Virus record (IMG/VR): IMGVR_UViG_3300013233_000093
Span: 124,001-188,000 of that record
Direction: 5' to 3' (one strand)
Length of the DNA stretch: 64,000 bases
The translations under genes were made by a program, and so were the position numbers. Positions 14,460 through 57,854 of the stretch are shown here, piece by piece (position 1 is the first letter of the stretch; every line of letters starts with the position of its first letter). A model generated the notes under the pieces. It worked only from the letters and a program-made list of their open reading frames with translations, had not been told where the DNA came from and ran no database searches.

Positions 14460-14657
14460 GTGGATATGAAGCGGAGAGATAAGGTGTTTGTTATGTTCAT
14501 TGGCGTTACATTTAGCGTCATCGTGATGCTTACTACGGTGTTGGTCAATGTTAACATACGCAATGCAGCTAATGTGGAGTTGGAACGATCCGCAGCACGC
14601 GAGGCATGTTTAAATGTCTTACGTGATGTGGGTAATACTACTGGGTCAGCGAATTGA
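14460..14657 (+). CDS. Small single-TM protein
   Basis: 65 aa; VFVMFIGVTFSVIVMLTTVLV. Confidence 0.65.
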   Translation: MDMKRRDKVFVMFIGVTFSVIVMLTTVLVNVNIRNAANVELERSAAREACLNVLRDVGNTTGSAN

Positions 14658-16354: not shown

Positions 16355-16570
16355 ATGCAAAAACGTTCCAAGTTGGGCGTTGTACTACATAAAGCTTTTC
16401 GTGATAACTTAAAGAAATCCCTGGCAGGTGCCAGCGTAGCGGTCATCGCGTTGGCCTGGTGTTTAAACGCCGGGTACGAATGGCAGTGTGTCCGTGACCC
16501 ATCCTTTGCAGGCTGTCAGTACATTACTGTCGCGCCATTGGTGGAAGTCGACGCCATACCAAGGGGTTAA
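16355..16570 (+). CDS. Small membrane protein
   Basis: 71 aa; AGGAG RBS; central hydrophobic segment. Confidence 0.65.
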   Translation: MQKRSKLGVVLHKAFRDNLKKSLAGASVAVIALAWCLNAGYEWQCVRDPSFAGCQYITVAPLVEVDAIPRG

Positions 16571-21845: not shown

Positions 21846-22016
21846 ATGTTAAAGTATTTGGCCATACTAAAGAACGACGGGATACCGTTGTTAACGGACA
21901 TCGTGGATGAGTCAGGTTATCGCTTCTATACGAGATCGGGGTTTAGCAGGTTTTGGAGGTATGGGCTTTTAGCGTATTTGATTACCGTATTAACGGTACT
22001 CGTAATTTTGCAGTGA
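21846..22016 (+). CDS. Small protein with C-terminal TM (56 aa, not in ORF track)
   Basis: AGGAGGAG RBS; MLKYLAILKNDG...YGLLAYLITVLTVLVILQ. Confidence 0.7.
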   Translation: MLKYLAILKNDGIPLLTDIVDESGYRFYTRSGFSRFWRYGLLAYLITVLTVLVILQ

Positions 22017-22025
22017 AATAGTAAG

Positions 22026-22214
22026 GTGGGTAGTATGAAATGTGGACTAATGATTTACACGCACAGCGGACTGTGGTCTAGGCCTGTAATGCGGATGTGT
22101 AACGCGTGTAAACAGTTTAACACGTGTACGATAACAGCACTCGAAGTGCGTAACTACAGAAGGAATCGGTTACATGAAGAATCAAACAATCGCGTCTCTG
22201 GAAAACATGCTTAA
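22026..22214 (+). CDS. Possible small protein (CxxC)
   Basis: 62-aa ORF filling the gap before the ligase; AAGGT RBS. Confidence 0.35.
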   Translation: MGSMKCGLMIYTHSGLWSRPVMRMCNACKQFNTCTITALEVRNYRRNRLHEESNNRVSGKHA

Positions 22215-30971: not shown

Positions 30972-31050
30972 AACCACGCAGTAACCTATGGACGCCGCGG
31001 GTGAAATCGTATGTATCCATAGCACATCAAACAACTTAGAGGGTTCTAAG

Positions 31051-32064
31051 ATGACAAATGACAAAAAGCTTTTGGTTTTAATCGGGAGATTTCAACCAAC
31101 CACCAACGCACACGTGGAGCTTATCAAGCAATCCATTAAGCCGGGTGAAGATCTGTTAATCGTGATAGGCAGTGCATACGCACCACGCACGGTGAAAAAT
31201 CCGTTCACGGCTCAAGAACGTGCGGGCATGCTGGAACACGCATTACGGGCAGCAGGGATCGGATGTGGTATTCACATAGCGTACGTTCGGGATCAACGGT
31301 ATAGTCCCGCGCAGTGGATATCCGACGTACAGGTAAAGATCAGTATGTACCCGACCTCTGTAGATAACGTGACCTTGCTAGGACATCATAAGGACTCGTC
31401 GTCTCAATATCTTGACGATTTTCCAGATTATGGATATCGGGAAGGTACAAAGTTTGGCGACAACCTTAGCGCCACGACCATTCGAGATGGGTATTTCGAG
31501 TACGGCCTGGTGTTTGACGATGTACCGCTTAACGTGAAGGTGTTCATGCGTGACTTTAAAAGGACGCCTGAATACGACGCTCTTCGAACAGCGTGGACGG
31601 ACAACAAACTTTACCAAGCGTCATGGTCACGTAGCCCATACCCGCCCACGTTCATTACAGGCGATGCAGTGGTGATACAATCCAGTCACGTATTGCTTGT
31701 TAAACGCCGTGATAATCCAGGCAAGGGCTTGTTAGCATTACCTGGAGGATTCTTAGATCCTATTGAAACAGTAGAGGACTGTATACTACGAGAACTTAAG
31801 GAAGAGACTCGTATTAACTTGCCGGTGAGATTACTGCGTGACAAGCTAAAGCACATCCGTGTGTTTGATGCACCCGATCGATCGCTTCGCGGTCGTACGG
31901 TAACACACGCAGGATTATTTCTTCTGCAAGGTAAAGAGATGCCAAAGGTCAAAGGATCTGACGACGCTGAAGTCGCATCATGGGTACCACTGGCGTCATT
32001 GGACCCGGGTGTGATGTACGAAGACCATTACGACATTATCAAGGCCTTAACGGGTAACTTGTAA
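31051..32064 (+). CDS. nadM: Bifunctional NMN adenylyltransferase / Nudix ADP-ribose pyrophosphatase (NadM-Nudix, NatV-like)
   Basis: GRFQPTTNAH, NPFTAQER, SATTIR; Nudix box GGFLDPIETVEDCILRELKEET; start set at the ATG after GAGG. Confidence 0.95.
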   Translation: MTNDKKLLVLIGRFQPTTNAHVELIKQSIKPGEDLLIVIGSAYAPRTVKNPFTAQERAGMLEHALRAAGIGCGIHIAYVRDQRYSPAQWISDVQVKISMYPTSVDNVTLLGHHKDSSSQYLDDFPDYGYREGTKFGDNLSATTIRDGYFEYGLVFDDVPLNVKVFMRDFKRTPEYDALRTAWTDNKLYQASWSRSPYPPTFITGDAVVIQSSHVLLVKRRDNPGKGLLALPGGFLDPIETVEDCILRELKEETRINLPVRLLRDKLKHIRVFDAPDRSLRGRTVTHAGLFLLQGKEMPKVKGSDDAEVASWVPLASLDPGVMYEDHYDIIKALTGNL

Positions 32065-32095
32065 GTCGTTCATTAACTTAATAGAGGGTTCTATT

Positions 32096-33532
32096 ATGAG
32101 AGATATATACGCACGTAACATGAGTGTTAACACCGATTCATACAAGGTCACCATGCCACCGCAGTACCCACCAGGTACTACTAACATTTGGGACTACATT
32201 GAATCTCGAGGCGGTCTGTACGATGCCACTTTGTTTTGCGGTATCCAGGCGTACCTCAAAGAGTATCTATCCATTCCCGTGACTAAGGAAATGGTGGATT
32301 TCTCCGAGGTCTTTTGGAAGGCACATGGTGTGCGCTATGATCGTGCCCAGTGGGATTACGTTGTAGAAAACCATGATGGCTTACTGCCTCTGGAGATCAG
32401 AGCGCTTCCAGAAGGCACCGTCTTGAAAACCCGTAACATTCTTGTCAGTGTGGTAAACACAGATGAGAAATGTAAATGGGCTACTACGTGGATCGAGAAG
32501 TCTTTACTGCGTGCTGTATGGTACGCGACATCTGTCGCTACTGTGTCGTACAACATCAAGAAAGACATCGCGCGGTTCTTACGTGACACCTCAGATGCAG
32601 GCATGATGGATCTGCGTTACATGTTACATGACTTTGGTGGACGGGGCGTAAGCTCCTTTGAATCCGCCGGTCTTGGCAGCATGGCGCATGGCTTATGTTT
32701 CGGTGGTACAGATACCCCTGAAGGCATCTTGGCTTCTATGGAGTATTATAACTCCGATGTAGCCAGTCACTCTTTATGGGGGGCTATGGAGCACAGTACG
32801 GTTACGTCTTGGGGCCGCGAAAACGAACGCCTGTCGTATGCAAACATGATCGATGAGTTTGCCGTCCCTAACGGTAAGTTTGCGATGCTGATCGATTCGT
32901 ACGATGTGTTCCACGCTGCACGGGTGATTATCGGTGAAGAGCTTCGCCAAAAGATCATCGACTGCGGCGCGCAGGTGATACTACGTCCTGACTCGGGAGA
33001 TCCTGTAACAGTGATGTTAGAGCTTCTGGAGATCCTGGGTGAGAAGTTTGGATACGACGTCAACAGTAAGGGGTATAAGATGCTCCGTACGGTGAGTTTG
33101 ATCCAAGGCGATGGCGTTTGTCACGATACCATCCTTAAGATGCTACAGGCCATTAAGGACGCTGGATGGGCTACGCTTAATGTAAGTTACGGCATGGGCG
33201 GTGCGCTACTGCAGATTCCAGATCGTGACATGCAGAAGTTTGCCATGAAGTGCAGCGCCATTAAAGTAAACGGTGAGTGGCGTACCGTGTATAAAGATCC
33301 TATCACAGATAAGGGCAAGCGTTCTAAAGCAGGACGTCTCGATCTTGTCAAGGGATGGGATGATACTGCGCGTGACAACTACTTTACCGATGTCATCGGC
33401 GATGAACCGCGCCCCAATAGTCTTTTGCGGACTGTCTGGCGTAACGGCAAGTTGCTGGTGGATGACGATTATAAGATGCTTCGTGATCGCGCCGGGTGGA
33501 ACGACTCCATAGAAGACTTTATAACTCGTTAG
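32096..33532 (+). CDS. nadV: Nicotinamide phosphoribosyltransferase
   Basis: TDSYK, HDFG.RG, MEHSTVTSWG, DSYD, LRPDSGDP, IQGDG, GMGGALLQ, KDPITD.GK.SK.G. Confidence 0.96.
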   Translation: MRDIYARNMSVNTDSYKVTMPPQYPPGTTNIWDYIESRGGLYDATLFCGIQAYLKEYLSIPVTKEMVDFSEVFWKAHGVRYDRAQWDYVVENHDGLLPLEIRALPEGTVLKTRNILVSVVNTDEKCKWATTWIEKSLLRAVWYATSVATVSYNIKKDIARFLRDTSDAGMMDLRYMLHDFGGRGVSSFESAGLGSMAHGLCFGGTDTPEGILASMEYYNSDVASHSLWGAMEHSTVTSWGRENERLSYANMIDEFAVPNGKFAMLIDSYDVFHAARVIIGEELRQKIIDCGAQVILRPDSGDPVTVMLELLEILGEKFGYDVNSKGYKMLRTVSLIQGDGVCHDTILKMLQAIKDAGWATLNVSYGMGGALLQIPDRDMQKFAMKCSAIKVNGEWRTVYKDPITDKGKRSKAGRLDLVKGWDDTARDNYFTDVIGDEPRPNSLLRTVWRNGKLLVDDDYKMLRDRAGWNDSIEDFITR

Positions 33533-38445: not shown

Positions 38446-38715
38446 ATGCGACCAGAAACAACTTTCGGAATCAACCTCCGAGCTTGGAGAAAGAAACACG
38501 GCATTACCCCACGTACAGTGGCGTTTAAAACCGACATCAGTCTAGGGCATTACCGTCACATTGAGCAATCAAAACGACGCTTTAGTGAAGACTGGGCTAA
38601 CGCGTTAATGGTATACATGACGGGCGTCGATGCGTCAGTGAGCACCAAGTACTTCGGTGGCACCCTAGAAGGGGCTGTAACGTACGAACGCACTGCACGA
38701 GGAGGAAACCCATGA
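38446..38715 (+). CDS. XRE-family HTH protein
   Basis: FGINLRAWRKKHGIT...ISLGHYRHIEQSKRR. Confidence 0.85.
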   Translation: MRPETTFGINLRAWRKKHGITPRTVAFKTDISLGHYRHIEQSKRRFSEDWANALMVYMTGVDASVSTKYFGGTLEGAVTYERTARGGNP

Positions 38716-42965: not shown

Positions 42966-43008
42966 TATTCAAAACTATATCACTATTATGATACTTAGGT
43001 AATGTATT
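42966..43008 (+). promoter_or_regulatory. Early promoter copy 8
   Basis: TATTCAAAACTATATCACTATTATGA tacttaggtaat. Confidence 0.9.
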
Positions 43009-43009
43009 G

Positions 43010-43117
43010 ATGGTGTATTTAGTTGTAACGGCGTTTGTGTTGTGGGTACTTGCACTCGCAGTAGGCGTGGTATTCGAGGCGTTTATGTGGGCGTACGATA
43101 AGTTAACAAATCGTTAA
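43010..43117 (+). CDS. Small TM peptide (35 aa, not in ORF track)
   Basis: MVYLVVTAFVLWVLALAVGVVFEAFMWAYDKLTNR; first ORF after the promoter. Confidence 0.55.
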   Translation: MVYLVVTAFVLWVLALAVGVVFEAFMWAYDKLTNR

Positions 43118-43167
43118 CGTGTAATCAACCAGCGACAATCATGTCGCTAAACAGAAGGTATGAAAAA

Positions 43168-43263
43168 ATGAACGAAGTGGTTTTTGGCGTGGTAATAATT
43201 GTGATGGCTTTGTCCATCATATCACTGGCCGGTATTGCTTATAAGGCGAGTGATGATGTTTAA
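43168..43263 (+). CDS. Small TM peptide (31 aa, not in ORF track)
   Basis: MNEVVFGVVIIVMALSIISLAGIAYKASDDV; GAAGG RBS. Confidence 0.55.
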   Translation: MNEVVFGVVIIVMALSIISLAGIAYKASDDV

Positions 43264-44550: not shown

Positions 44551-44787
44551 ATTGTAAAGCCATTTATACAACACCGCTTTGAAGTCACTGTCTAATAGTA
44601 ACGAATCGTGATGCTTGCCCTTTAATGGCGCAGACAGTCCGTTATAATCAAGACCGCGCAGCCATCGTTCTCGTATCGTAGCTATGCTCAACACGCCATA
44701 CGATTCCAGGTGTATCTGGTTAGGCGTGGTGTATTTACCATCATTGTCTTTTATCTTGCTGTGTATGCTAAACGAAGTGCGTCTCAT
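44542..44787 (-). CDS. Small protein, possible DNA-binding module
   Basis: 81 aa; AGGA RBS; SIATIRERWLRG..L.AP resembles DNA-binding tails of HNH endonucleases. Confidence 0.5.
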   Translation of the reverse strand: MRRTSFSIHSKIKDNDGKYTTPNQIHLESYGVLSIATIRERWLRGLDYNGLSAPLKGKHHDSLLLDSDFKAVLYKWLYNKK

Positions 44788-44830
44788 AATAAGTCCTATT
44801 GTAAGTCACACAATAACATTCTCAATGATT

Positions 44831-44870
44831 AATCAAGACTATATTACTACTATGATAACACTTTTGTTAT
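44831..44870 (+). promoter_or_regulatory. Early promoter variant
   Basis: aatcaagacTATATTACtactatga followed by hairpin ataaca-cttt-tgttat. Confidence 0.75.
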
Positions 44871-44896
44871 TGTTACGGATAAAGGTTTGAAGTAAT

Positions 44897-47132: not shown

Positions 47133-47385
47133 GCCGTTTAGGGACTTCGCTATTGACAACTGCAGCATCATCATCATCGTCGACGGTGTACGGTGTAACA
47201 TCGGATACCAGGAGATGACAATGACCACGTTAAACGCCAACGTGACTCATGCGTACAAGGTAACTGATGGATATGTGGACATATGCTTGTTTACGCTTAC
47301 ACACCGTACGAGGATTGTATCACAGCGTAATGCAGATCGGTATTACGTAACCCACTCACTCATTTCGGAACAGGAAAGATCCTAA
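47107..47385 (+). CDS. Hypothetical protein
   Basis: 92 aa; GGAGG RBS. Confidence 0.65.
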   Translation: MPQYTNVRKPFRDFAIDNCSIIIIVDGVRCNIGYQEMTMTTLNANVTHAYKVTDGYVDICLFTLTHRTRIVSQRNADRYYVTHSLISEQERS

Positions 47386-48176
47386 TGAATACAAAAGGTT
47401 TTATCACTTGCAATGCCCACTCCATGTGGTCTGAAAACGACATACGCGGTGCCTTAGAGCCGTATCTAAATGTGGCAGTAACGCATACGAATGCTCTGCG
47501 GTCTACCGTCATGCTGTGTGTGTTTCGCACAGACGGCACTATCCTAGCACGACAGTCGTTGAGTACCGGCACTGTATCCTACACACCAGAGTCAAAAATC
47601 TGGTCTAAGTACATGCTGGACACGTCTACCGACGTAATGGCAGTGACCAGTTCTGTACGGAGTCTACGTGCGTTACTGAAACCGGTTAGTCCTGATGGGT
47701 TAAACAGCTTGGCGTTTTTAAAGATCAGTACCTTTCGCATGAGGGGCAGTGTATCTGAACGTGCGTTAAGTCAGTTGCAATCCATCGTCATTAATGGTGA
47801 TGGTGATGGTGGCAATCCGGATTGCGGTAAGTTGACGACGGACGTGGATAGCAGTGGCGCCATGACTGTTACGTCAAGTTCTGCTCAAGCTGGGTTTGAA
47901 ACGCCCGGGCGTACGCGAAAGGGAGAATACATAATCGTCTCTTCGTCGGACAGTCACGTCATCACCGCTTCTAACATTGTCAATGCTAAGCACAAGTGTA
48001 GCTTACACATGACAGTCGTGTCAAACGGCAAATGTCCTACCGGTACGTGGACGTATGGCATTGGTACGTACCGAGCTGATTTATCAACTCCGTGCGGATT
48101 TGATGAGATAGTCTCTCAAGTAACTCCGATAGCAGGACAGCTCTCTAATTGGGCAGATCGCTATCTAGGAAAATAA
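47385..48176 (+). CDS. Hypothetical protein, probable paralogue of 51633-52442
   Basis: SENDIRGALEPYL vs SEGDVSVALSPSL; CGKLTTDVDSSGAMTV vs CMPKLGTQSTQAGTMQV. Confidence 0.7.
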   Translation: MNTKGFITCNAHSMWSENDIRGALEPYLNVAVTHTNALRSTVMLCVFRTDGTILARQSLSTGTVSYTPESKIWSKYMLDTSTDVMAVTSSVRSLRALLKPVSPDGLNSLAFLKISTFRMRGSVSERALSQLQSIVINGDGDGGNPDCGKLTTDVDSSGAMTVTSSSAQAGFETPGRTRKGEYIIVSSSDSHVITASNIVNAKHKCSLHMTVVSNGKCPTGTWTYGIGTYRADLSTPCGFDEIVSQVTPIAGQLSNWADRYLGK

Positions 48177-48177
48177 T

Positions 48178-48208
48178 AACCCTTCAACCCTTCAACCCTT
48201 CAACCTTC
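48178..48208 (+). repeat. 8-nt tandem repeat (aacccttc) x3 plus a partial copy
   Basis: Read directly from the sequence. Confidence 0.9.
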
Positions 48209-48223
48209 TCTAGGAGAGAAACA

Positions 48224-48370
48224 ATGTTTAACTGTTTAACTGAGTATCGCGTAGCGTCATCCCGTATTGCATTGGGCTTCTTTGTATTTGGCGTGGCAAG
48301 CGTCGTGTATAAATACCGTTATCCCGTGGCAATCATTGCGGCATACGCCGCGTTATACCAGTTGGTTTAA
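48224..48370 (+). CDS. Small membrane protein (48 aa)
   Basis: AGGAG RBS; two short hydrophobic segments; hairpin at 48382-48406 follows. Confidence 0.6.
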   Translation: MFNCLTEYRVASSRIALGFFVFGVASVVYKYRYPVAIIAAYAALYQLV

Positions 48371-48426
48371 CAACCCCTTTAGCAGTCGGCGTTTTACGCC
48401 GACTGCCTTTATACAGGATTATCAAA

Positions 48427-48609
48427 ATGAGATTACACATATTGCTGCTTATCGCGCTGGCAGTCGCCACGGGCATTTGGATAAACGCGCTTTTGGCCAG
48501 TCACAGCGTATCCATAAGCGGGTACCAAGATCCACACAAAGACTTCAAGCCGGGTCTATGTCAGGCATGTCACCCACTGCCACCACGGTACCCTGGACGC
48601 GTAACATGA
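48427..48609 (+). CDS. Exported mini-protein with a c-type haem motif (magnetochrome-like PH-x7-CxxCH)
   Basis: AGGA RBS; N-terminal signal/TM; ISGYQD-PH-KDFKPGL-CQACH-PL; stop overlaps the next start (ATGA). Confidence 0.7.
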   Translation: MRLHILLLIALAVATGIWINALLASHSVSISGYQDPHKDFKPGLCQACHPLPPRYPGRVT

Positions 48610-49085
48610 TTATGACACCGGATGCACACAGTGTACGAGAATCACACGGAGCTGATGTAATAGCAATCATTGGAATGGCGGGGTTTGTGGTGTTCGACAT
48701 CACATGGATACAGTCGCATCTAACCGCTATGATGGTGCCCGTGGTTGTGCTCGCGTCGCTGATCGCAGCGGCATTGATTAACAAAGCTTCCTCTCATATA
48801 CTTATGGATGGGTTAATCCGTGGCAATGAGCAAAGAGCTTACTGGGCAGTAGCACGATCTGTGTCACACGATCACGGACTGCTTGCCACCTTATACGCCG
48901 CAGTGGGTTTGGTCGTGGGCTGTAACATTTACTTCTACTCCATAGACGCGACGTTTATGTCTGACGTGTTTATAGGGACGTGTGTGTATGCGAGTATCAT
49001 GCACGGCAGGTACGCAGCTGTGCGATCGGTACAGCCTTACTTTATCGTTAGCACGGAACAGGAGCAGTCATGCGATACACTATGA
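48606..49085 (+). CDS. 4-TM membrane protein
   Basis: Start set at ATG 48606 (ATGA coupling); four hydrophobic helices. Confidence 0.75.
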   Translation: MIMTPDAHSVRESHGADVIAIIGMAGFVVFDITWIQSHLTAMMVPVVVLASLIAAALINKASSHILMDGLIRGNEQRAYWAVARSVSHDHGLLATLYAAVGLVVGCNIYFYSIDATFMSDVFIGTCVYASIMHGRYAAVRSVQPYFIVSTEQEQSCDTL

Positions 49086-49510
49086 AGCGGCAAGATTTGG
49101 AGTATGCTAAAAAGGACGTGGTGATGGCAGGTGTATACAACGCATCCGGCATTACGGCATTTACCCTGGTGGACATATTGATGCACGCGGGCGGGTATAC
49201 GTACCACTTGATGGCGATCGCGGCATTGGTGATACTTACCATGGTTATCGTAGATTATTATGCCAGTCAGTTACATGACCTTGTGTCTGTCGACGATATC
49301 GCCACCTTCGATACCGACATCCTTGTGCATTACGTTAAGTTTGTCATTTATGCGTGCACTGCTATAAGCGGTTTCTGCTTCTTATGGCTTACGTTACAAC
49401 CAAACCATTTTGCGCCGCCGCTGGTGGCGATCGTTTACTTTACACACATGCGTCTATTCTGGATGGTGTGGTTTGTAAAAATAAAAAAGGAGTCTTCTGA
49501 TGAATCTTAA
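49070..49510 (+). CDS. 4-TM membrane protein
   Basis: Four hydrophobic helices; several His residues. Confidence 0.8.
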   Translation: MRYTMKRQDLEYAKKDVVMAGVYNASGITAFTLVDILMHAGGYTYHLMAIAALVILTMVIVDYYASQLHDLVSVDDIATFDTDILVHYVKFVIYACTAISGFCFLWLTLQPNHFAPPLVAIVYFTHMRLFWMVWFVKIKKESSDES

Positions 49511-49534
49511 AGAGCTTAAAGAGGATTGTGCACT

Positions 49535-49954
49535 ATGTACACCGACGAAAGCTTAGAAGATAGGGCTGCGTTTCTACACAACTTTACACAGGCGTATGTA
49601 ATGGGAATGGCTATTTATACGACATTTTATTACATCATATCAGGATCTGCAATGGCATTGCTCCCGCTTGCTTGCTTAACTGCACCAAGCTTTGTCGTAA
49701 TATGGTGGAAGGCGGAGGTGCGGCGACAGCCGCTTATTACGGATGGGTATAAAAAACGTGTGAGTATTGCAAGAAGTATATTCGACATTAGCTTACATTG
49801 CGTGTTAGCGTACTACGCGATCGCAGCGGTGCGTGCAGGATTTACGCCAGAGTCGTTTACGCACGTGGTTATAATGGCGTTAACTTACACTGTGGCTGCA
49901 GGGGCGTCTGAGATATCGCTGCCGGGCGACGACTTGACGTCTACGCCGAAATAA
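49535..49954 (+). CDS. 4-TM membrane protein
   Basis: Start set at ATG 49535 (GAGGA RBS). Confidence 0.75.
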   Translation: MYTDESLEDRAAFLHNFTQAYVMGMAIYTTFYYIISGSAMALLPLACLTAPSFVVIWWKAEVRRQPLITDGYKKRVSIARSIFDISLHCVLAYYAIAAVRAGFTPESFTHVVIMALTYTVAAGASEISLPGDDLTSTPK

Positions 49955-50013
49955 AGGTTTGCGGTAACTAAGCAAGTAATGTCACATGCTTATCATTAAT
50001 GAGGAATGGTGTT

Positions 50014-50439
50014 ATGAGTAAAACAGATCCATTACGAGGCTATACCGGACTTGGGTTTCAGGACGTTATTTGGTTCGCGTATACCGTGTACACGGTAAAT
50101 ACAATGACGACTGATATACCCATAATAATGTCGTGGGCGTTTGCCACTGCATTAACTGGATGGGTTTTTGGCTTGCACTACAGCACAGCTGCATACACGA
50201 GTCGGATTAACCTTCACGCCGCGCGTCAGGCAACGGATAGGAATATGGCGATGACTGTAAAGGCGTGCGTCATAACACACGCCATATTTTTACTGTCTGC
50301 ATTGGCGACCTCCGTACTCGTTATCGGATACGCAGACGACATTAACAAAATGCATATCGGTTACCTAATCGTATCAGGTATTTACATGCTACTTAACGCA
50401 CTCTTTGCCGTGCTAATCATGGGGGACGTTAAGCGATGA
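50014..50439 (+). CDS. 4-TM membrane protein
   Basis: Start set at ATG 50014 (GAGGA RBS). Confidence 0.75.
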   Translation: MSKTDPLRGYTGLGFQDVIWFAYTVYTVNTMTTDIPIIMSWAFATALTGWVFGLHYSTAAYTSRINLHAARQATDRNMAMTVKACVITHAIFLLSALATSVLVIGYADDINKMHIGYLIVSGIYMLLNALFAVLIMGDVKR

Positions 50440-50867
50440 ATAAACCATTTGCGGTGATTGCCAAGTTCGTGTTTATTTGGATGATCTTGACGTGGTTTAC
50501 CCATGAGACTGTCGTGCCCATAGTAAAGGCGGGTTTAGAAGTGAGTGGGGATCAGCTGCTCGTGTTTGGATTTATGTTAGTCTACATGACCATAGCGTAT
50601 ATTCTAACACACCGCTGCAGCACACTCGTCTATTTAATGGAAGACCGTCCGTGTGTTGATGTACGTAAATCCTTGATTAGAACTATGTCAGTGGATGTGA
50701 TTGTACAAGTGTTGTTTATAGTAACTGCGTGGTACCTGCTTCCGTCTACACCTGTAGAAGTATTGTTACTTACTTGTGGTCTACTTATCGTGTACGTATC
50801 AGTGCTTTACATTAACATACGCCGCATGGACAAAGCTAGGGTGTCGTTGCAAGGAGACGTCAAATAA
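50436..50867 (+). CDS. 4-TM membrane protein
   Basis: ATGA overlap; four hydrophobic helices. Confidence 0.8.
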   Translation: MNKPFAVIAKFVFIWMILTWFTHETVVPIVKAGLEVSGDQLLVFGFMLVYMTIAYILTHRCSTLVYLMEDRPCVDVRKSLIRTMSVDVIVQVLFIVTAWYLLPSTPVEVLLLTCGLLIVYVSVLYINIRRMDKARVSLQGDVK

Positions 50868-50868
50868 A

Positions 50869-51345
50869 ATGGATACACCAGGTATGGTGGTGATAGAATG
50901 TGAGTCAGTGGTGCTGGATGCTATGACAGGACTGTCATTTGGCATAATGTGCATGGCAATGGCTAACTACCTATTCGTGGGTAGCTGGCACCTGACGTTC
51001 CTTTTAGTAGTCGGGGTACTGATAAGTAATTACCGGCTACGTGGCGTCTTATCTCGATACCGTTGTTTGTTACAGCAAGATTATACATCAAGCATGGACT
51101 ACATGACAAGCAACGTTGTGTCATCCACCTCTTCAATTGCACTGCTGTTCATACTGTTTAGCGTGGCCACTGCGTACACAGCAGTGCATACAGTCATGTG
51201 GCCTGCGTTACTCATTACTTATATAGTGACTGCATTACTATACTGGAAGGTCAACAACGCACTGAGTTATTACACACTCTCGGTGAATCACCACAGATCC
51301 CAGTTTATACGTAATACAGTCACGGGTAGGTACGAACGTGTGTAA
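50869..51345 (+). CDS. 4-TM membrane protein
   Basis: Start set at ATG 50869 (AAGGAG RBS). Confidence 0.75.
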   Translation: MDTPGMVVIECESVVLDAMTGLSFGIMCMAMANYLFVGSWHLTFLLVVGVLISNYRLRGVLSRYRCLLQQDYTSSMDYMTSNVVSSTSSIALLFILFSVATAYTAVHTVMWPALLITYIVTALLYWKVNNALSYYTLSVNHHRSQFIRNTVTGRYERV

Positions 51346-51369
51346 TTTGCGTTCGTCTGTATGATAACG

Positions 51370-51406
51370 CTATATTACCTTAGTGAGGCATGCGACCTTG
51401 CATGTT
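51370..51406 (+). promoter_or_regulatory. Early promoter variant
   Basis: cTATATTACcttagtga followed by hairpin gcatgc-gacctt-gcatgt. Confidence 0.6.
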
Positions 51407-51447
51407 GTAACCATAGGTGCCATAACCTACAAAGATAGGTATGGTAA

Positions 51448-51630
51448 GTGAAGAGTATGAAATTAGATGTAGAGTCTCTACTGATCGCCGTTGTGGCGGT
51501 CGTTGTTCTTGTCGGGTGTTTTGCACCTGACGCTTCCACAGGTCGTACTTATAAAGAGTACGGCCCTTCTGAAACAGAAGCGGCGCAGTTGCGTCGCGAT
51601 TATGGGCCTGCGAGGCCCAAAGGATATTAA
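51448..51630 (+). CDS. Small putative lipoprotein
   Basis: Hydrophobic stretch ending in the lipobox LVGC. Confidence 0.65.
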   Translation: MKSMKLDVESLLIAVVAVVVLVGCFAPDASTGRTYKEYGPSETEAAQLRRDYGPARPKGY

Positions 51631-52513: not shown

Positions 52514-53596
52514 ATGAGTACATACTTACAAGGCATCATAGACGGGGAACCTGCGAAGTTCTTTACGTCTGCATCTAAAAACGGTGACTGTGTTGTAACC
52601 TACGATAACACAAGTGTCGGCGTATTGCACACTAAGTGCATCGTAAATTCCAGTTGGACTGCGTTACCTGATGTCACTGTCCCGACCGTTACGGGTGATA
52701 AGTTCAGTGGGCTGTTTGCAATAAGCGGAGACGGGCAGCGACTATTCACTGCGGGATACGCCGCGACAGGCACTGTAAACATTTACGTGCGTCAGAGAAT
52801 CACGGCAGGTTGGGCATCTCCAATAAGCGTAATAACCACGGTTACTGCGTATGATTTACACACACAGCTTATTGTTTCTTATGACGGATCGTTAGTCGTT
52901 ATCAACAGCATAGACAATCTGACAAAGGCGTCTGAGTTCTATCTGTTTAAAGCCACTACGGCATGGCCTGCGATACCACACGTTATCACAGCAGATAGGA
53001 TAAGTTGTAGTAACGATGGCACCCGTGTCGTCTGTGGCACTGCATGCGGGTTAACTGCTCGAGGTAAGGCAGACTTGCTTTACTACGATAATGGAACATG
53101 GCTTCCTCCTGTAAGTCTCGATGCCAAGCTCACTGGGCGATCGTCCACGCGGGACGGTTTAGTGACGATATCAGGGGACGGACTCACTGTGGTGTGCGCT
53201 GCGCTGTTAAACCCACCCAGGGGATCCACAGTAGGGACTTATTCACTTGTGCGATATCAACTGGCTGAAATCGGGAACGTCGCTTACGCGGGCGTTATAG
53301 GCGCCAGAACGGGATGCGGTATACAAGAGCTACCAGCAATCATCCAGAACATTGTGATCTGCACTCGCGGGGAGAACGTCCTTGTGTATGGAGTAGATGC
53401 TGCAGGCGGGATGGTCTCTGATCTGTACACGATGAAAGACGCGTTATGGCGGGTGATAAAAGCACCTGCTACCGTGGAACTTATTACCCTGCAATCTGTA
53501 TCTGCACCCAGAGCTTACGTATGCAATAACGCCGATGCGTACATGATTACCTATGCCACACCGAATGGTGTAGAACGATCCAGTATACTAAAGTGA
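52514..53596 (+). CDS. Beta-propeller protein (divergent FG-GAP-like)
   Basis: ISGDGQRLF, VSYDGSLVV, CSNDGTRVV, ISGDGLTVV blades. Confidence 0.8.
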   Translation: MSTYLQGIIDGEPAKFFTSASKNGDCVVTYDNTSVGVLHTKCIVNSSWTALPDVTVPTVTGDKFSGLFAISGDGQRLFTAGYAATGTVNIYVRQRITAGWASPISVITTVTAYDLHTQLIVSYDGSLVVINSIDNLTKASEFYLFKATTAWPAIPHVITADRISCSNDGTRVVCGTACGLTARGKADLLYYDNGTWLPPVSLDAKLTGRSSTRDGLVTISGDGLTVVCAALLNPPRGSTVGTYSLVRYQLAEIGNVAYAGVIGARTGCGIQELPAIIQNIVICTRGENVLVYGVDAAGGMVSDLYTMKDALWRVIKAPATVELITLQSVSAPRAYVCNNADAYMITYATPNGVERSSILK

Positions 53597-53607
53597 GGTA
53601 AATAAGA

Positions 53608-54759
53608 ATGAGTATCTTTTATAAGCACCAAGTGTTTGAAGGTAATGCTGAAGTACAGGACATGGCCGTCTCCACCGACGGCACAATGTTGGTGATTGGT
53701 CGACCTGACCTGTCCAGTGTATCCATTTATGAGAAACTGGCTACTGTACCGACCTTTGATGTCCCTGTATCATTAGACATGCCTGAAAGAAGAAACTTCG
53801 GCTATGCAGTGGCGCTATCAGGTGATCTTAATACCATTGCAGTGGGTTACTCAGAAATAGCCGTAGAGGACACCTACATGGCTCCTGAGTTCACCCACGT
53901 GGTTATGTTTATCCGCAATGATCTCGGCAACTGGATTGAAGACGGTGAGGTATCGGTAGGCTTAAACGGAGTAACTCCCGATACGATACGACTGTCGTTC
54001 GACGGACTTACGTTAACCGTGGGCGGCAGTGACCTTGTGTATACACTTATAAAGGATCCCGTGAACGGCGATGTGTTGGATACGGAAGATCTTCCGCTTA
54101 CCGCTCAGTTGTTTGAGCGATCGTTGGCTGATCCTTGGCATGCCGTAAAGGCGGTGCGGGCAGGCAACATAGACGGGCTACAGCAAGCGTTTGGCGGGAA
54201 TGCGTGGACAGTGAATAACGTCGCTGGTGCAGTGGATGAGATGATGGTCTCTACTGAATGGCGTCATGGACCTGTGGCAGGCTGTCGTATGTACAGAGTA
54301 ACGAAGAAAGCCGGTATTTGGACCGCGCCGGTTTTGGATGTATCCGCTATGGGCAGCGACATTGTTATGTCAGACGACATGACTGTAATGATCGTGTCTG
54401 TCACGTCTAACGTGCCACAGGCCGGTTTGTTTCATATGTACGCACGCACTCCAGGCGGTGCGTGGAGTGTGCCTACCGTGATCCTAAAGCCTCCTCTGGC
54501 AGATGACCTGTTGTTTGCCCTTAACCTAGGAATGAGTTCTGATGGATTATGGCAGTCCGCTACAGCAAGGCATTACGATGCGCCATCAGGTAACGTATAC
54601 GTATATAAAGCAGGTGTGTATAACGGACGCATTGTAACCGGAGATGTCACGCGGACTTCGTTTGGTAAAATTACCAGATTGCCCTCATTACCACAGCCCG
54701 TAGTCTACGTGTCGGACGGTTCTAATGTAAACCAGTATACTACTGTATTACCATTATAA
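53608..54759 (+). CDS. Beta-propeller protein (FG-GAP-like)
   Basis: VSTDGTMLVIG, FGYAVALSGDLNTIAVG, LSFDGLTLTVG, MSSDGLW. Confidence 0.8.
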   Translation: MSIFYKHQVFEGNAEVQDMAVSTDGTMLVIGRPDLSSVSIYEKLATVPTFDVPVSLDMPERRNFGYAVALSGDLNTIAVGYSEIAVEDTYMAPEFTHVVMFIRNDLGNWIEDGEVSVGLNGVTPDTIRLSFDGLTLTVGGSDLVYTLIKDPVNGDVLDTEDLPLTAQLFERSLADPWHAVKAVRAGNIDGLQQAFGGNAWTVNNVAGAVDEMMVSTEWRHGPVAGCRMYRVTKKAGIWTAPVLDVSAMGSDIVMSDDMTVMIVSVTSNVPQAGLFHMYARTPGGAWSVPTVILKPPLADDLLFALNLGMSSDGLWQSATARHYDAPSGNVYVYKAGVYNGRIVTGDVTRTSFGKITRLPSLPQPVVYVSDGSNVNQYTTVLPL

Positions 54760-54780
54760 CAATATAAAATCGGAGAGAAG

Positions 54781-55896
54781 ATGACTTACGCAGACAACGT
54801 CCGCAAATGCATAGACATGGACATGAGCGCAGACGGACGCAGTTGCGTTACGCTGGACAGAGTGATGGATAATAAAGACGCCATCGGTACCCTACATCAC
54901 CACACTTTGTTGGGCGGTGAATGGCACAACACCCGTACCTTTCAAATACCCACGTTGTTCAAGACATCTGTGTCGTATGAAACGGTACAGGCCGTGTGTA
55001 TATCAGGAGACGGTAACGTAATGGCTGTGACGACCAATTTCAGTTATCGTGTATACGTCAAATCCTTATACGACGGCAACATTTGGATGCCTGTTATAAC
55101 GCACTCTTATCGATACGATAAGATCGCCACGACACGAGGCGCCAGACCTACGCTAAGTTATACGGGCAACAAGCTTATGCTTTCCCCGATAGGACATACT
55201 CCTAAACGATGTAGGTTAAAACTGGTATACCTCACGGCTAAGTTTGATTACAACCAAGTAGGTAAGTATAATGACTTATCCATAAACCCCACGTTTTACT
55301 GGGATGTAACTAACGTGGCCGTGAGTGAGATAAGTACGAGTTACATCGTCGGGATTATCACAGAAGCCACTGTACGTCAGGCGCGACATAAGGGCAATGG
55401 CGTGTTGCGTGTAGAGGACATCACAGGTCACCTGCAGAAAAAGATCCGTGATGTACGTCTGTACGGACTGTATGTGGAACCACGCAACATTTGCCATCAT
55501 CAAGATGAACGTGAAATGGCGTACATCAATGGCTTAGAAGGTGCGTTACACGTACTGCCATATGACACACAGAAGCAAGTCATCGTGACAGACATGCCGG
55601 ACAATACTGTCGCCACAGGCACGGTGTCTTCCAGCTTAGACGGTGATATCATCGCAGTGAGTGTGTGCAGATCCGGTACATACGGTTTACTCATATTTAA
55701 ACGACGCGGTAGGGTATACGATGTGGCAAGGTTTGTGGATACCAATTCCAACGACGCCATTAACCCGATCGCTGTCTATAAGGTAAGTCCTTGTGGTAAT
55801 CACTTGGACTACAGCGTCCCCACTAAAATAGACCCTGCTACAGGGGAACGTGGGGACTGGACACGCTTACAACTTAACATTGTTGAAAAGGATTAA
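54781..55896 (+). CDS. Beta-propeller protein (divergent)
   Basis: MSADGRSCV, ISGDGNVMAV, LSYTGNKL, SLDGDIIAV, VSPCGNHL. Confidence 0.8.
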   Translation: MTYADNVRKCIDMDMSADGRSCVTLDRVMDNKDAIGTLHHHTLLGGEWHNTRTFQIPTLFKTSVSYETVQAVCISGDGNVMAVTTNFSYRVYVKSLYDGNIWMPVITHSYRYDKIATTRGARPTLSYTGNKLMLSPIGHTPKRCRLKLVYLTAKFDYNQVGKYNDLSINPTFYWDVTNVAVSEISTSYIVGIITEATVRQARHKGNGVLRVEDITGHLQKKIRDVRLYGLYVEPRNICHHQDEREMAYINGLEGALHVLPYDTQKQVIVTDMPDNTVATGTVSSSLDGDIIAVSVCRSGTYGLLIFKRRGRVYDVARFVDTNSNDAINPIAVYKVSPCGNHLDYSVPTKIDPATGERGDWTRLQLNIVEKD

Positions 55897-55898
55897 AC

Positions 55899-56891
55899 AT
55901 GCATACAGAATCAATTCGCATTACCGAGTTAGCTGAGTTCGCAAGTGATACGTTCAGCAGTAATGCAATGGATTTATCCAGTGACGGTAAAACCGTGGTG
56001 ACGATTACACCCGACCAGAAACACGCGGTTGTATTGGTTGTGATGAATAAGCACAGGCGTAAATGGTCTAAGGTCGCAGAAGTGACACTGCACGGATGTA
56101 ACTATGACGATGCCAGTGTAAGCATCAGTCCGGATGGATTGCGTGTTGCGGTGGGTCTACCTGGAGATGACGTTGTGTATGTCTATCGCTTATACGTGCA
56201 CGGCGTGAAACCACTTACATGCATATGTCGTCTACATCGTCCGAACTCCATGATCGTACACGGATTTGGTTGCGTCGTAGCCATTCGATTGGTTAACGAA
56301 AAGTATCGTTTGTTTACGACTGCGTACTGCATGCAAATGCATGCGTATGAATTCGATGATAAAGATGCCGCTAAGTGCGTTCGTACTGGGACGCTGCAAG
56401 CACCTATGACACCTAACGCGTACTACGACATCTTTGCCAATCATGACGGGTCACGTGTCACAGTTATAACAGGATCTACTGCTACCGTGATGACCGGCGA
56501 ATTGATGACATTGGAGATGATTGCGTTACCATCGACTGTGGATCGTGCGTGTGCAGCAGACAGTGACGTGGCCGTGGTCTCTTCTGGAGATAACCTGTAT
56601 CATACACGCTATAATGCAGAGAGCAAGGAGGCCAAGGAGGTGCTAGACGATCCACTGGCCATCAGTGTGGATGTGTCTGCCAACTACGATGGCACGGTCT
56701 TAATAAACGCCATGCGCAGTAAGATGGTGGTGTACGATTATAAAGCCGATCTCGTCACCCATGTGGGGTTGTTACGCCCAGATGTGAACGGGATGACGGG
56801 TAGATGTACTATGGCAGGTGCATCACGTGCATGTGCTGGCATGCATCAGTTACGTGCTGGCGGAAGTGTGTTATCAATAGCGGAATGGTGA
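55899..56891 (+). CDS. Beta-propeller protein (divergent)
   Basis: LSSDGKTVV, ISPDGLRVAVG, ANHDGSRV, ANYDGTVL. Confidence 0.8.
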   Translation: MHTESIRITELAEFASDTFSSNAMDLSSDGKTVVTITPDQKHAVVLVVMNKHRRKWSKVAEVTLHGCNYDDASVSISPDGLRVAVGLPGDDVVYVYRLYVHGVKPLTCICRLHRPNSMIVHGFGCVVAIRLVNEKYRLFTTAYCMQMHAYEFDDKDAAKCVRTGTLQAPMTPNAYYDIFANHDGSRVTVITGSTATVMTGELMTLEMIALPSTVDRACAADSDVAVVSSGDNLYHTRYNAESKEAKEVLDDPLAISVDVSANYDGTVLINAMRSKMVVYDYKADLVTHVGLLRPDVNGMTGRCTMAGASRACAGMHQLRAGGSVLSIAEW

Positions 56892-56892
56892 T

Positions 56893-57810
56893 ATGGATTC
56901 TCAAGTAAGACGCAAGTCCCTTGCTGTGGTGGCGATGAACAAAAAGTTATCGTCTAACATCATCGAGTGCTCCCCCGTAGAACAGATCCGTCTTATGGAC
57001 GGTGAGTTAGACGTGGGCACGGAAGATGTGGTCAGCAGTGGGATCGACCGGGATAACAATGTATACACTGCCAGTATAAAGATGGGTGTGACTGTGGAGG
57101 CGGAATGGTGGCCTGAGACCAACCGTCCCACACCGCCTGACGTCCGCCGTGGAGAGACTGTATGGCTATGGCATACCGGAGACAGTAATAAGTTTTACTG
57201 GGAGTCTACGGGAGCCTATGACGACCTCAGACGTCTAGAGACCATCGTCTTTCGCTTATCTGGATTACCCGATAACGCAGATGAGAAGTTAGATGCCAGT
57301 AATACGTACTGGATAGAATGGTCTACTCATAAGAAGATGGTGACGTTACATACTTCTATGCGTAACGGTGAGAAGGCAGGTTACACATTACAACTTAACA
57401 CGGGTGATGGTCAGGCTACGCTGGAGGATAATGAAGGTAATATAGTTCAGTTGGATACAGCAGCCACACACATCTGGGCGCGTAACATAAAAGACAGCAT
57501 CTTTGAGTTACTTAAAGGTGATATACGCGCGTCCGTCCCAGGCGGGTCGGAGATCTTTATGAAGGACGGAGACATCCTTACTCATAACGGCCATGGCGTA
57601 GAGTTTAACATGGTAGGTGGAAACACAATCCACAAGATGCCAGGTAACTACATCATAAACGCGACGAACATGATCGTGAATGCAAAGACCATGCACAACA
57701 AACCTGTAATTGGCGGAAAGGCCACTTACGGTAAGATCAGTGTAGGAAGCATCTCTGGTGGTAAGGGGTCATTTGGCCTGTTGCTTGCTGGTAAGTTTAA
57801 CTATCCATAG
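56893..57810 (+). CDS. Baseplate central spike-like protein (OB fold + beta-helix)
   Basis: AEW...NR.TPPDVRRGE.V.L....D..KFYW and RRLET motifs of phiKZ-like spikes; repetitive beta C-terminus. Confidence 0.7.
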   Translation: MDSQVRRKSLAVVAMNKKLSSNIIECSPVEQIRLMDGELDVGTEDVVSSGIDRDNNVYTASIKMGVTVEAEWWPETNRPTPPDVRRGETVWLWHTGDSNKFYWESTGAYDDLRRLETIVFRLSGLPDNADEKLDASNTYWIEWSTHKKMVTLHTSMRNGEKAGYTLQLNTGDGQATLEDNEGNIVQLDTAATHIWARNIKDSIFELLKGDIRASVPGGSEIFMKDGDILTHNGHGVEFNMVGGNTIHKMPGNYIINATNMIVNAKTMHNKPVIGGKATYGKISVGSISGGKGSFGLLLAGKFNYP

Positions 57811-57854
57811 ACGGCATACACAGTACCGCATTGCGGTACTGTGTCTTATGCCGT
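57811..57854. terminator. Bidirectional hairpin with TATGCCGT on both strands
   Basis: acggcata / acacagtaccgca-t-tgcggtactgtgt / tatgccgt between convergent genes; no U-tract. Confidence 0.8.

What the first reader, a model, noticed from the sequence alone, without database searches (positions are those of the whole stretch)
48427..48609. Phage-encoded mini c-type cytochrome candidate with a magnetochrome-like motif
Seen: a 60-aa ORF with an RBS, an N-terminal signal/TM helix, and then I-SGYQD-PH-KDFKPGL-CQACH-PL. Its stop overlaps the next start (ATGA at 48606), which supports it being a real gene rather than part of the 272-aa overlapping ORF in the track. Known: CxxCH outside the cytoplasm is the haem-c attachment site. 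The pattern hydrophobic-x5-9-PH-x5-9-CxxCH-x1-2-hydrophobic is, as I recall it, the magnetochrome (MamP/MamT/MamE/MamX) bis-His minimal haem domain. Inference: the phage makes one of the smallest possible haem-c proteins. It could tap host electron transfer or iron redox, or titrate the host cytochrome c maturation machinery.
Basis: partly seen in the sequence, partly recalled or inferred. Interest (0 to 1): 0.85.

Follow-up and report, generated by a model that had tools for sequence, protein, structure and literature searches.

The report
Orphan phage mini haem-motif membrane ORF
A distant PhiKZ-like jumbo phage carries an unannotated 60-residue ORF, probably a real exported protein, whose tail has the attachment motif for covalent haem; it has no relatives anywhere, so only a simple expression and haem-stain experiment can show whether it is a tiny cytochrome.

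Summary
ORF 48427..48609(+) reads exactly as described: MRLH, a 20-residue hydrophobic helix, then PH-x7-CQACH-PL. It has an AGGA ribosome-binding site 8 nt upstream, and its stop overlaps the next ATG.

It is probably a real gene. It sits after a strong hairpin, inside a run of nine membrane-protein genes, and its RBS is typical for this phage. No clearly spurious ORF in the window has as hydrophobic an N-terminus. The source's 272-aa call over it looks over-extended.

The tail fits the published minimal magnetochrome motif. In shuffled windows, an N-terminal helix plus this motif never appeared (0 of 700).

The evidence stops there. No homologue was found among 1.84 billion representative proteins, 5.8 billion clusters, GenBank phages, or DNA-motif scans of IMG/VR and metagenomes. 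There is no Pfam, NCBIfam, PHROG or PDB match. The neighbouring genes are orphans too. The amino-acid composition is atypical for this phage, the predicted tail is disordered, and the host is unknown.

Published work shows bacterial cytochrome c synthases need little more than an exported CXXCH, so haem attachment is plausible (about 0.4) but unproven. Homology to magnetochromes is not supported. The finding is intriguing and cheap to test, but unverified.

The parts
48224..48370 (+). Upstream unannotated 48-aa ORF with one hydrophobic helix. It is the ATG-started version of the 73-aa TTG ORF 48149..48370.
   Evidence: AGGAG lies 7 nt before ATG 48224. Helix at residues 10-28. Codon score 0.22 per codon in frame, like confident genes (measured on the longer TTG-started form 48149-48367). 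The source did not call it.
48382..48406 (+). Perfect 11-bp stem with a 3-nt loop, 12 nt after the upstream stop. It is terminator-like, followed by CTTTATAC, and marks an intergenic boundary.
   Evidence: Fold energy -21.8 kcal/mol, z = -5.4, 0 of 200 shuffles fold as well. Listed as inverted repeat I6. The consensus terminator scan did not report it because the T run is short.
48415..48418 (+). Ribosome-binding site AGGA, 8 nt before the ATG, in the context acAGGAtta.
   Evidence: The same core and 6-9 nt spacing occur at many confident genes, for example 13731, 30472, 35002, 47385 and 55899.
48427..48609 (+). The 60-aa ORF of the finding (the end coordinate includes the stop). It is absent from the source annotation and from the protein collections.
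   Evidence: Not returned even as a self hit. The source calls a 272-aa ORF here instead.
48439..48498 (+). Hydrophobic segment I5-A24. It is either a membrane anchor or the core of a Sec signal peptide. A possible cleavage site is L-L-A|S after A24, read by eye and not predicted with a tool.
   Evidence: Kyte-Doolittle mean 2.46. Modelled as a helix with pLDDT about 88. Of 288 ORFs of 40-100 aa in six frames, only 4 reach this value, and the other three are coding-strand gap-filling ORFs that look like genes.
48532..48537 (+). P36-H37, the candidate distal haem ligand, 7 residues before the first Cys.
   Evidence: Read from the sequence. The spacing lies within the published X5-9.
48559..48573 (+). 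C45-Q-A-C48-H49, the CXXCH haem-c attachment motif, followed by P-L-P-P.
   Evidence: One search places CQACH at 48559.
48606..49085 (+). Downstream 159-aa protein with about three hydrophobic helices. Its ATG overlaps the stop of the 60-aa ORF, and its own RBS is weak, so its translation is probably coupled.
   Evidence: Only GGA lies upstream. Codon score 0.25 in frame. Helices listed. It is an orphan whose only database hit is the 272-aa self call.

Best explanation
The ORF is a real, unannotated orphan gene of a distant PhiKZ-like jumbo phage.

The likely mechanism has several steps, and all but the first are inferred. The sequence shows an N-terminal hydrophobic segment. From this I infer insertion through Sec with the N-terminus inside, so that the 36-residue tail is outside the cytoplasm. 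The tail may stay anchored, or it may be released if signal peptidase cuts after A24. The unfolded tail then presents CQACH to the host's cytochrome c synthase (System I CcmFH or System II CcsBA). The synthase links haem to C45 and C48, with H49 as one axial ligand. H37 of the PH pair could fold back as the second ligand. The result would be a very small, solvent-exposed bis-His haem peptide at the outer face of the inner membrane.

This resembles a single magnetochrome unit in how it would work, but it is not shown to be related to one.

Its role in infection is unknown. My tentative choice is that it acts as a haem and synthase sink or as a small periplasmic redox centre, working within the surrounding cassette of membrane proteins.
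For: Evidence that the gene is real:
- A typical RBS at typical spacing.
- An ATGA overlap with a downstream gene that lacks a good RBS of its own.
- A position directly after a strong hairpin that ends the previous small gene.
- The coding strand of a 47-kb one-strand gene block, within nine consecutive membrane-protein genes.
- In gaps between long genes, ORFs of at least 56 aa are about 10 on the coding strand against 3 on the other. Several have strong RBSs, and at least two are in the source's own gene list (38446..38715 and 51457..51630).
- No clearly spurious ORF in the window has as hydrophobic an N-terminus.

Evidence from the motif:
- The minimal magnetochrome unit is met with x7 spacing.
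- The helix and motif together appeared in 0 of 700 shuffles.

Evidence from biochemistry:
- CcsBA attaches haem to 9- to 20-residue CXXCH peptides and needs only the two thiols and the His (PMC8112865).
- CXXCH engineered into exported proteins yields covalent haem in E. coli (PMC6962350).
- An artificial-microperoxidase paper using the E. coli Ccm system is listed in PMC3601427. I saw the title only; the paper is not held.

Charge bias around the helix favours a tail outside the cytoplasm (read from the sequence).
Against: - No homologue exists anywhere, so there is no conservation test.
- No match to the magnetochrome family PF18509 or to any cytochrome family, even when the tail alone is scanned at E up to 10. 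No match to PDB sequences.
- The overall codon score is -0.09 per codon, against 0.22 +/- 0.11 for 60-codon windows of genes. Only 0.5% of gene windows score as low as -0.023, the ORF's first score, and -0.09 is lower still. A score using only synonymous codon choice is uninformative, so the penalty comes from the Cys-, His- and Pro-rich composition.
- The tail is modelled as disordered, and the fold search returned nothing.
- Magnetochromes are nearly always tandem and confined to magnetotactic bacteria (Introduction; abstract). This one is single and in a phage.
- The closing hydrophobic position is Pro.
- The host is unknown, so it cannot be checked for a haem-attachment system.
- The window contains no haem, iron or cytochrome-related gene.
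- The ORF was picked from a large scan, so some look-elsewhere effect applies.
Confidence: 0.4

Rival explanations
1. The ORF is a real small membrane or secreted phage protein, but the CxxCH is not a haem site. The two cysteines could form a periplasmic disulfide or bind a metal. The tail could face the cytoplasm. The host could lack an active haem-attachment system during infection. The protein would then act like other small phage membrane proteins, for example in lysis timing, superinfection exclusion or interference with a host membrane complex.
For: All the evidence that the gene is real applies here too. It lies in a cassette of nine membrane proteins with no redox signature. It has no similarity to any cytochrome family. 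From my own knowledge, small phage proteins with an N-terminal anchor and a Cys-bearing periplasmic tail exist, such as the T4 holin and antiholin proteins.
Against: An exported CXXCH is enough for bacterial synthases. A PH pair at the published spacing from CxxCH is expected in only about 1-3% of chance CxxCH occurrences (11 to 38 of 1338). CxxC without a thioredoxin fold has no established activity (my own knowledge).
Confidence: 0.35
2. The ORF is not translated. The stretch 48371-48605 would be a non-coding spacer, holding a terminator hairpin plus promoter or leader, ahead of the 159-aa gene. The open frame, the hydrophobic run and the motif would all be coincidence, noticed because a large scan was searching for motifs.
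For: The codon score resembles off-frame sequence rather than genes: the likelihood ratio is about 0.07 under a Gaussian approximation. Frame +2 scores as well as the ORF's own frame. Gaps of 200-400 nt are common in this phage. Six-frame translation of the window gives 7 CxxCH against 3.7 in shuffles, nearly all of them in junk ORFs. There are no homologues. The source gene caller did not choose this frame.
Against: The RBS, the ATGA overlap, the placement after the hairpin and an N-terminus more hydrophobic than any clearly spurious ORF all argue against coincidence. The joint chance is about 1e-4 per window. The low codon score is a composition effect, not a synonymous-codon effect. The downstream gene would be left with a poor RBS.
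Confidence: 0.2
3. The source annotation is right: the region is the N-terminal third of one 272-aa protein (48267..49085), read in the other frame.
For: That frame is open from 48267, and the JGI gene caller chose it.
Against: It has a TTG start with no RBS. It runs through the -21.8 kcal/mol hairpin and across two small ORFs that have RBSs. The codon score of 48267-48605 in that frame is about zero (-0.017), against 0.25 for the part after 48606. The extra N-terminal residues are rich in Arg, Ser, Thr and His, like off-frame sequence.
Confidence: 0.03

Closest known systems
Magnetochrome (MCR) domain of MamP, MamT, MamE and MamX (Pfam PF18509)
   Same: A single N-terminal membrane helix precedes a very short haem unit. 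PH lies 5-9 residues before CX2CH (7 here), and a hydrophobic residue lies 5-9 residues before PH (I30 or V28). The domain size is comparable: MCR is 19-28 residues (PMC3971196).
   Different: There is no profile or sequence similarity. It is a single copy, whereas MCRs are almost always tandem. There is no PDZ or protease partner. It is in a PhiKZ-like phage, not in a magnetosome gene cluster of a magnetotactic bacterium. The residue after His is Pro, not a typical hydrophobic one. Any resemblance is best read as convergence on a minimal bis-His design.
Engineered haem tags and artificial microperoxidases made by bacterial cytochrome c maturation systems
   Same: A short exported peptide whose only requirement is CXXCH. 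A nearby His can supply the sixth ligand (PMC6962350; PMC8112865).
   Different: Those are laboratory constructs. This would be a natural, phage-encoded one. Haem attachment here is untested.
Small membrane-anchored monohaem cytochromes c of bacteria (for example Bacillus subtilis CccA; my own knowledge)
   Same: An N-terminal anchor and an extracytoplasmic CXXCH.
   Different: Those have a folded class I cytochrome c domain of about 70-100 residues with His-Met ligation and clear family membership. This tail has 36 residues and no family match.
Small phage inner-membrane proteins with periplasmic tails (for example the T4 holin T and antiholin RI; my own knowledge)
   Same: The size, the N-terminal anchor, the Cys-bearing periplasmic tail, and a location among other membrane-protein genes.
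   Different: There is no sequence similarity, none of them carries CXXCH, and no endolysin or spanin pair was recognised next to this ORF.

Membership tests
Magnetochrome domain (PF18509) | Minimal unit [P/T/H]H-X5-9-CX2CH | tested here: met
   P36-H37, seven residues, then C45-x-x-C48-H49. The definition comes from PMC3971196.
Magnetochrome domain (PF18509) | Full delineation psi1-X5-9-PH-X5-9-CX2CH-psi2, with the two hydrophobic residues closing the fold | tested here: inconclusive
   I30 (x5) or V28 (x7) can serve as psi1. The position directly after H49 is Pro50, and Leu51 is one residue later.
Magnetochrome domain (PF18509) | Sequence or profile similarity to known MCR domains | tested here: not met
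   No Pfam hit for the whole ORF at E up to 1, or for the tail alone at E up to 10. No NCBIfam hit. No MamP chain among PDB sequence hits. PF18509 is named as the Pfam family in PMC11648623. I ran no positive control with a true MCR, and HMMER's filters drop most hits above E of about 0.1.
Magnetochrome domain (PF18509) | Tandem MCR units, usually with a PDZ or protease domain, encoded in the magnetosome gene clusters of magnetotactic bacteria | tested here: not met
   There is one unit in a 60-aa protein. The genome is a PhiKZ-like jumbo phage. The window has no mam-like genes. Tandem arrangement is the rule for MCRs (Introduction; abstract).
Magnetochrome domain (PF18509) | Anchoring by a single membrane-spanning helix | tested here: met
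   One N-terminal helix. This feature of MCR proteins is stated in PMC3971196.
c-type cytochrome (any class) | CXXCH motif | tested here: met
   CQACH at 48559-48573.
c-type cytochrome (any class) | The motif is located outside the cytoplasm | tested here: inconclusive
   A signal- or anchor-like N-terminus and the charge bias predict N-in, C-out. No dedicated topology or signal-peptide predictor was available.
c-type cytochrome (any class) | The host has a haem-attachment system (System I or II) | not testable with these tools
   The host is unknown. The nearest isolates share only about 30% identity in capsid and ligase. There are no tRNAs in the window. The sample identifiers are not found in the literature library.
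c-type cytochrome (any class) | Covalently bound haem | not testable with these tools
   This needs haem staining, pyridine haemochrome spectra or mass spectrometry.
Protein-coding gene of this phage | RBS, gene-boundary logic and coding statistics like those of other genes | tested here: inconclusive
   The RBS, ATGA overlap, hairpin boundary and membrane-gene context are all met. The composition-driven codon score is not met. The synonymous-codon score is neutral. No conservation test is possible.

The most novel reading that the evidence does not exclude
A phage makes the smallest natural stand-alone c-type cytochrome known: 60 residues as made, and perhaps about 36 after signal cleavage. 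It would be a single magnetochrome-like bis-His haem unit that arose independently of magnetotactic bacteria. It would use the host's own cytochrome c maturation system to place a solvent-exposed haem at the periplasmic face of the membrane during infection. There it would draw off haem and synthase capacity, or act as a small redox or peroxidase centre.
Probability: 0.3. Interest if true: 0.8.

Novelty: new variant of a known kind. Interest (0 to 1): 0.45.

Why it matters
If haem is attached, this would push the lower size limit for a natural stand-alone cytochrome c well below the roughly 70-residue proteins cited as the smallest. It would show that the magnetochrome design is not confined to magnetosomes. 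It would also add haem proteins built by the host's maturation machinery to the list of ways jumbo phages alter the host envelope. It could be useful as a natural minimal haem tag.

If haem is not attached, the locus still corrects an annotation: a 272-aa call hides two small genes. It also points to an uncharacterised nine-gene membrane-protein cassette in a very divergent PhiKZ-like phage.

Tried and rejected
Searches for homologues of the 60-aa ORF, all negative:
- The word-indexed search of 5.8 billion clusters found nothing.
- Full HMMER against 1.84 billion representatives gave one hit, a 4141-aa plakin-repeat protein. It is a repeat artefact with no Cys motif.
- tblastn against GenBank phages gave only an E = 5 match in a Xylella phage.
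- Back-translated peptide patterns in metagenome contigs gave nothing.
- A degenerate DNA pattern for PH-x7-CxxCH-P-L-P found 8 sites in IMG/VR and 103 in metagenomes. All except the ORF itself were off-frame-looking sequence without a hydrophobic helix.

Searches through neighbouring genes for syntenic relatives, all negative: the 159-aa and 263-aa proteins hit only themselves. Megablast of 6 kb against phages found nothing.

Family and structure searches, all negative: Pfam, PHROGs, NCBIfam and PDB sequences.

AlphaFold without an alignment gave a confident helix and an unstructured tail. The Foldseek result against the PDB is therefore meaningless.

Other checks:
- The six multi-helix neighbours are not detectable paralogues. 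Neither are the 260-380-aa neighbours.
- A spanin pair was considered because of the 57-aa lipoprotein, but the next gene encodes a soluble protein.
- Host or sample identification through the literature failed.
- No literature on cytochromes c encoded by jumbo phages was found.

Not attempted:
- I did not walk the rest of the 223-kb contig, because each look-up adds only about 10 kb.
- I did not run a true magnetochrome through Pfam as a positive control, because no such sequence was available without typing one from memory.

Full report
**What is there.** The window is bases 124001-188000 of a 222,906-bp IMG/VR contig, Ga0172420_10000004 from JGI sample 3300013233. It begins inside a PhiKZ-type major capsid gene (PF25620). 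It also encodes an NAD-dependent ligase, NAMPT, an NMNAT-NUDIX fusion and thymidylate kinase. Capsid and ligase are only about 30% identical to any isolate, and megablast finds nothing. This is therefore a very divergent PhiKZ-like jumbo phage with an unknown host.

It has MRLH, twenty hydrophobic residues (I5-A24), then a 36-residue tail containing I30, P36-H37, seven residues, C45-Q-A-C48-H49 and P-L-P-P. The TGA stop at 48607-48609 overlaps the ATG at 48606-48608.

**Is it a gene?** Several observations say yes.
- AGGA lies 8 nt upstream in the context acAGGAtta. This core and spacing recur at many confident genes of this phage.
- The previous gene is best read as a 48-aa ORF (48224-48370) with its own AGGAG. 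Twelve nucleotides after its stop lies a perfect 11-bp hairpin (-21.8 kcal/mol, z = -5.4).
- The 60-aa ORF fills the space between that hairpin and the next gene. That gene has only a weak RBS, so translational coupling through the ATGA overlap is a sensible reading.
- The ORF lies on the coding strand of a long one-strand block, inside nine consecutive predicted membrane-protein genes.
- In the gaps between long genes, ORFs of at least 56 aa number about 10 on the coding strand and 3 on the other. Several carry strong RBSs, and at least two are in the source's own gene list (38446..38715 and 51457..51630).
- Of 288 ORFs of 40-100 aa in all six frames, only four have an N-terminus as hydrophobic as this one. 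The other three are coding-strand gap-fillers of the same kind.

The source's 272-aa call (TTG at 48267, no RBS) crosses the hairpin and both small ORFs. Its codon score upstream of 48606 is about zero. I take it to be over-extended.

One observation says no. The overall codon log-odds is -0.09 per codon, against 0.22 +/- 0.11 for 60-codon windows of held-out genes. When only synonymous codon choice is scored, the ORF falls between genes and off-frame sequence, and the measure barely discriminates in this phage. The penalty therefore reflects a composition rich in Cys, His and Pro. A tiny haem-binding tail would have that composition, and so would junk sequence.

I put the probability that the ORF is translated at roughly 0.8.

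**Is the motif more than chance?** Six-frame translation of the window gives 7 CxxCH against 3.7 in shuffles. All the others lie in short junk ORFs, and no long gene has one. In 700 dinucleotide-preserving shuffles:
- ORFs of at least 40 aa with CxxCH occur 1.9 times per window.
- Those with PH-x5-9-CxxCH occur 0.016 times per window.
- Those with an N-terminal helix plus a later CxxCH occur 0.010 times per window.
- Those with both features occur 0 times in 700.

Multiplying the separate rates gives about 1e-4 to 3e-4 per window. That is rare, but not negligible for a scan of many thousands of windows.

**Comparison with magnetochromes.** The minimal unit is [P/T/H]H-X5-9-CX2CH, and the full form is psi1-X5-9-PH-X5-9-CX2CH-psi2. 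The domain spans 19-28 residues, and His of the PH pair is the sixth ligand (PMC3971196). MCR proteins are anchored by one membrane helix.

The ORF meets the minimal unit and has the single helix. The closing hydrophobic position is Pro50, with Leu51 one residue later.

It fails the other family features.
- It does not match PF18509 (named as the Pfam family in PMC11648623) or any other Pfam or NCBIfam model, even with the tail alone at E up to 10.
- It does not match any PDB sequence.
- It is a single unit, whereas tandem units are the rule (abstract).
- It sits in a phage with no mam-like neighbours.

So it may work like a magnetochrome unit, but membership of that family is not supported.

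**Would haem be attached?** In vitro, the bacterial synthase CcsBA attaches haem to peptides of 9-20 residues. It requires only the two thiols and the His, and such peptides behaved as inhibitors of cytochrome c biogenesis, an effect demonstrated experimentally with the mitochondrial synthase HCCS (PMC8112865). CXXCH placed in exported non-haem proteins becomes haem-bearing in E. coli (PMC6962350). If the tail is exported in a host with System I or II, attachment is therefore the expected outcome.

Export is favoured by the charge bias. The N-flank carries R2 plus the amino terminus, and the first 15 residues after the helix carry net -1. The N-terminus also has a signal-like shape, with Asn20 and L-L-A|S after the hydrophobic core. 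I could run no dedicated predictor, and the host is unknown.

**No comparative evidence exists.** The ORF has no relative in 5.8 billion clusters, in 1.84 billion representatives (whose one hit is a plakin-repeat artefact), in GenBank phages, or in DNA-level scans that do not depend on gene calls. Its two neighbours are orphans as well. The model of the tail is disordered and the fold search is empty.

**Verdict.** I estimate the alternatives as follows.
- A haem-c mini-protein: about 0.4.
- A real small envelope protein without haem: about 0.35.
- An untranslated coincidence: about 0.2.
- The source's 272-aa reading: about 0.03.

The proposed roles in infection are pure inference. One inexpensive experiment would settle the main question: express the ORF with ccm genes, stain for haem, and compare Cys and His mutants.

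Noticed in passing
window 48224-51630 (+): Nine consecutive predicted membrane-protein genes: a 48-aa ORF, the 60-aa ORF, six proteins of 139-159 aa with 2-4 hydrophobic helices each, and a 57-aa ORF. The six have similar size but no detectable pairwise similarity. None has a family hit or a homologue.
   Followed up: partly
window 51457-51630 (+): A 57-aa ORF with an L-V-G-C lipobox after a hydrophobic N-terminus and a Pro- and charge-rich tail. It looks like a small lipoprotein, similar in style to an outer-membrane spanin, but the adjacent 269-aa protein is soluble, so no spanin pair is evident.
   Followed up: partly
window 48267-49085 (+): The source annotation's 272-aa protein has a TTG start and no RBS. 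It reads through a strong hairpin and over two small ORFs that have RBSs. The true gene most likely starts at 48606 and encodes 159 aa.
   Followed up: yes
window 47385-48176 (+): The source calls only a 145-aa product here, but the ORF is open for 263 aa from an ATG with an AGGA RBS. The start of this gene is uncertain.
   Followed up: no
window 30988-33532 (+): An NAD+ salvage pair: an NMNAT-like cytidylyltransferase fused to a NUDIX domain (30988-32064), directly followed by nicotinamide phosphoribosyltransferase (32096-33532). An NAD-dependent DNA ligase lies at 22174-24153. This arrangement is known from other large phages (my own knowledge).
   Followed up: partly
window 57818-57844: A perfect 13-bp inverted repeat with a 1-nt loop, lying 8 nt after the last gene of the + strand block, where transcription converges with a - strand gene. 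It is probably a bidirectional terminator.
   Followed up: no
window 14460-14657, 16355-16570, 21846-22016 and 43141-43263 (+); weaker candidates 43007-43117 and 44684-44890 (+): Further small coding-strand ORFs fill apparent intergenic gaps. ORFs 16355 and 21846 have strong RBSs. ORFs 14460 and 43141 have an N-terminal hydrophobic helix, and 43141 is in the source's own gene list. The two weaker candidates each have a hydrophobic helix but no recognisable RBS. This phage seems to encode many small membrane proteins that gene callers partly miss.
   Followed up: partly
window 52514-57810 (+): Five consecutive genes of 305-383 aa with no family hits and no similarity to each other.
   Followed up: partly
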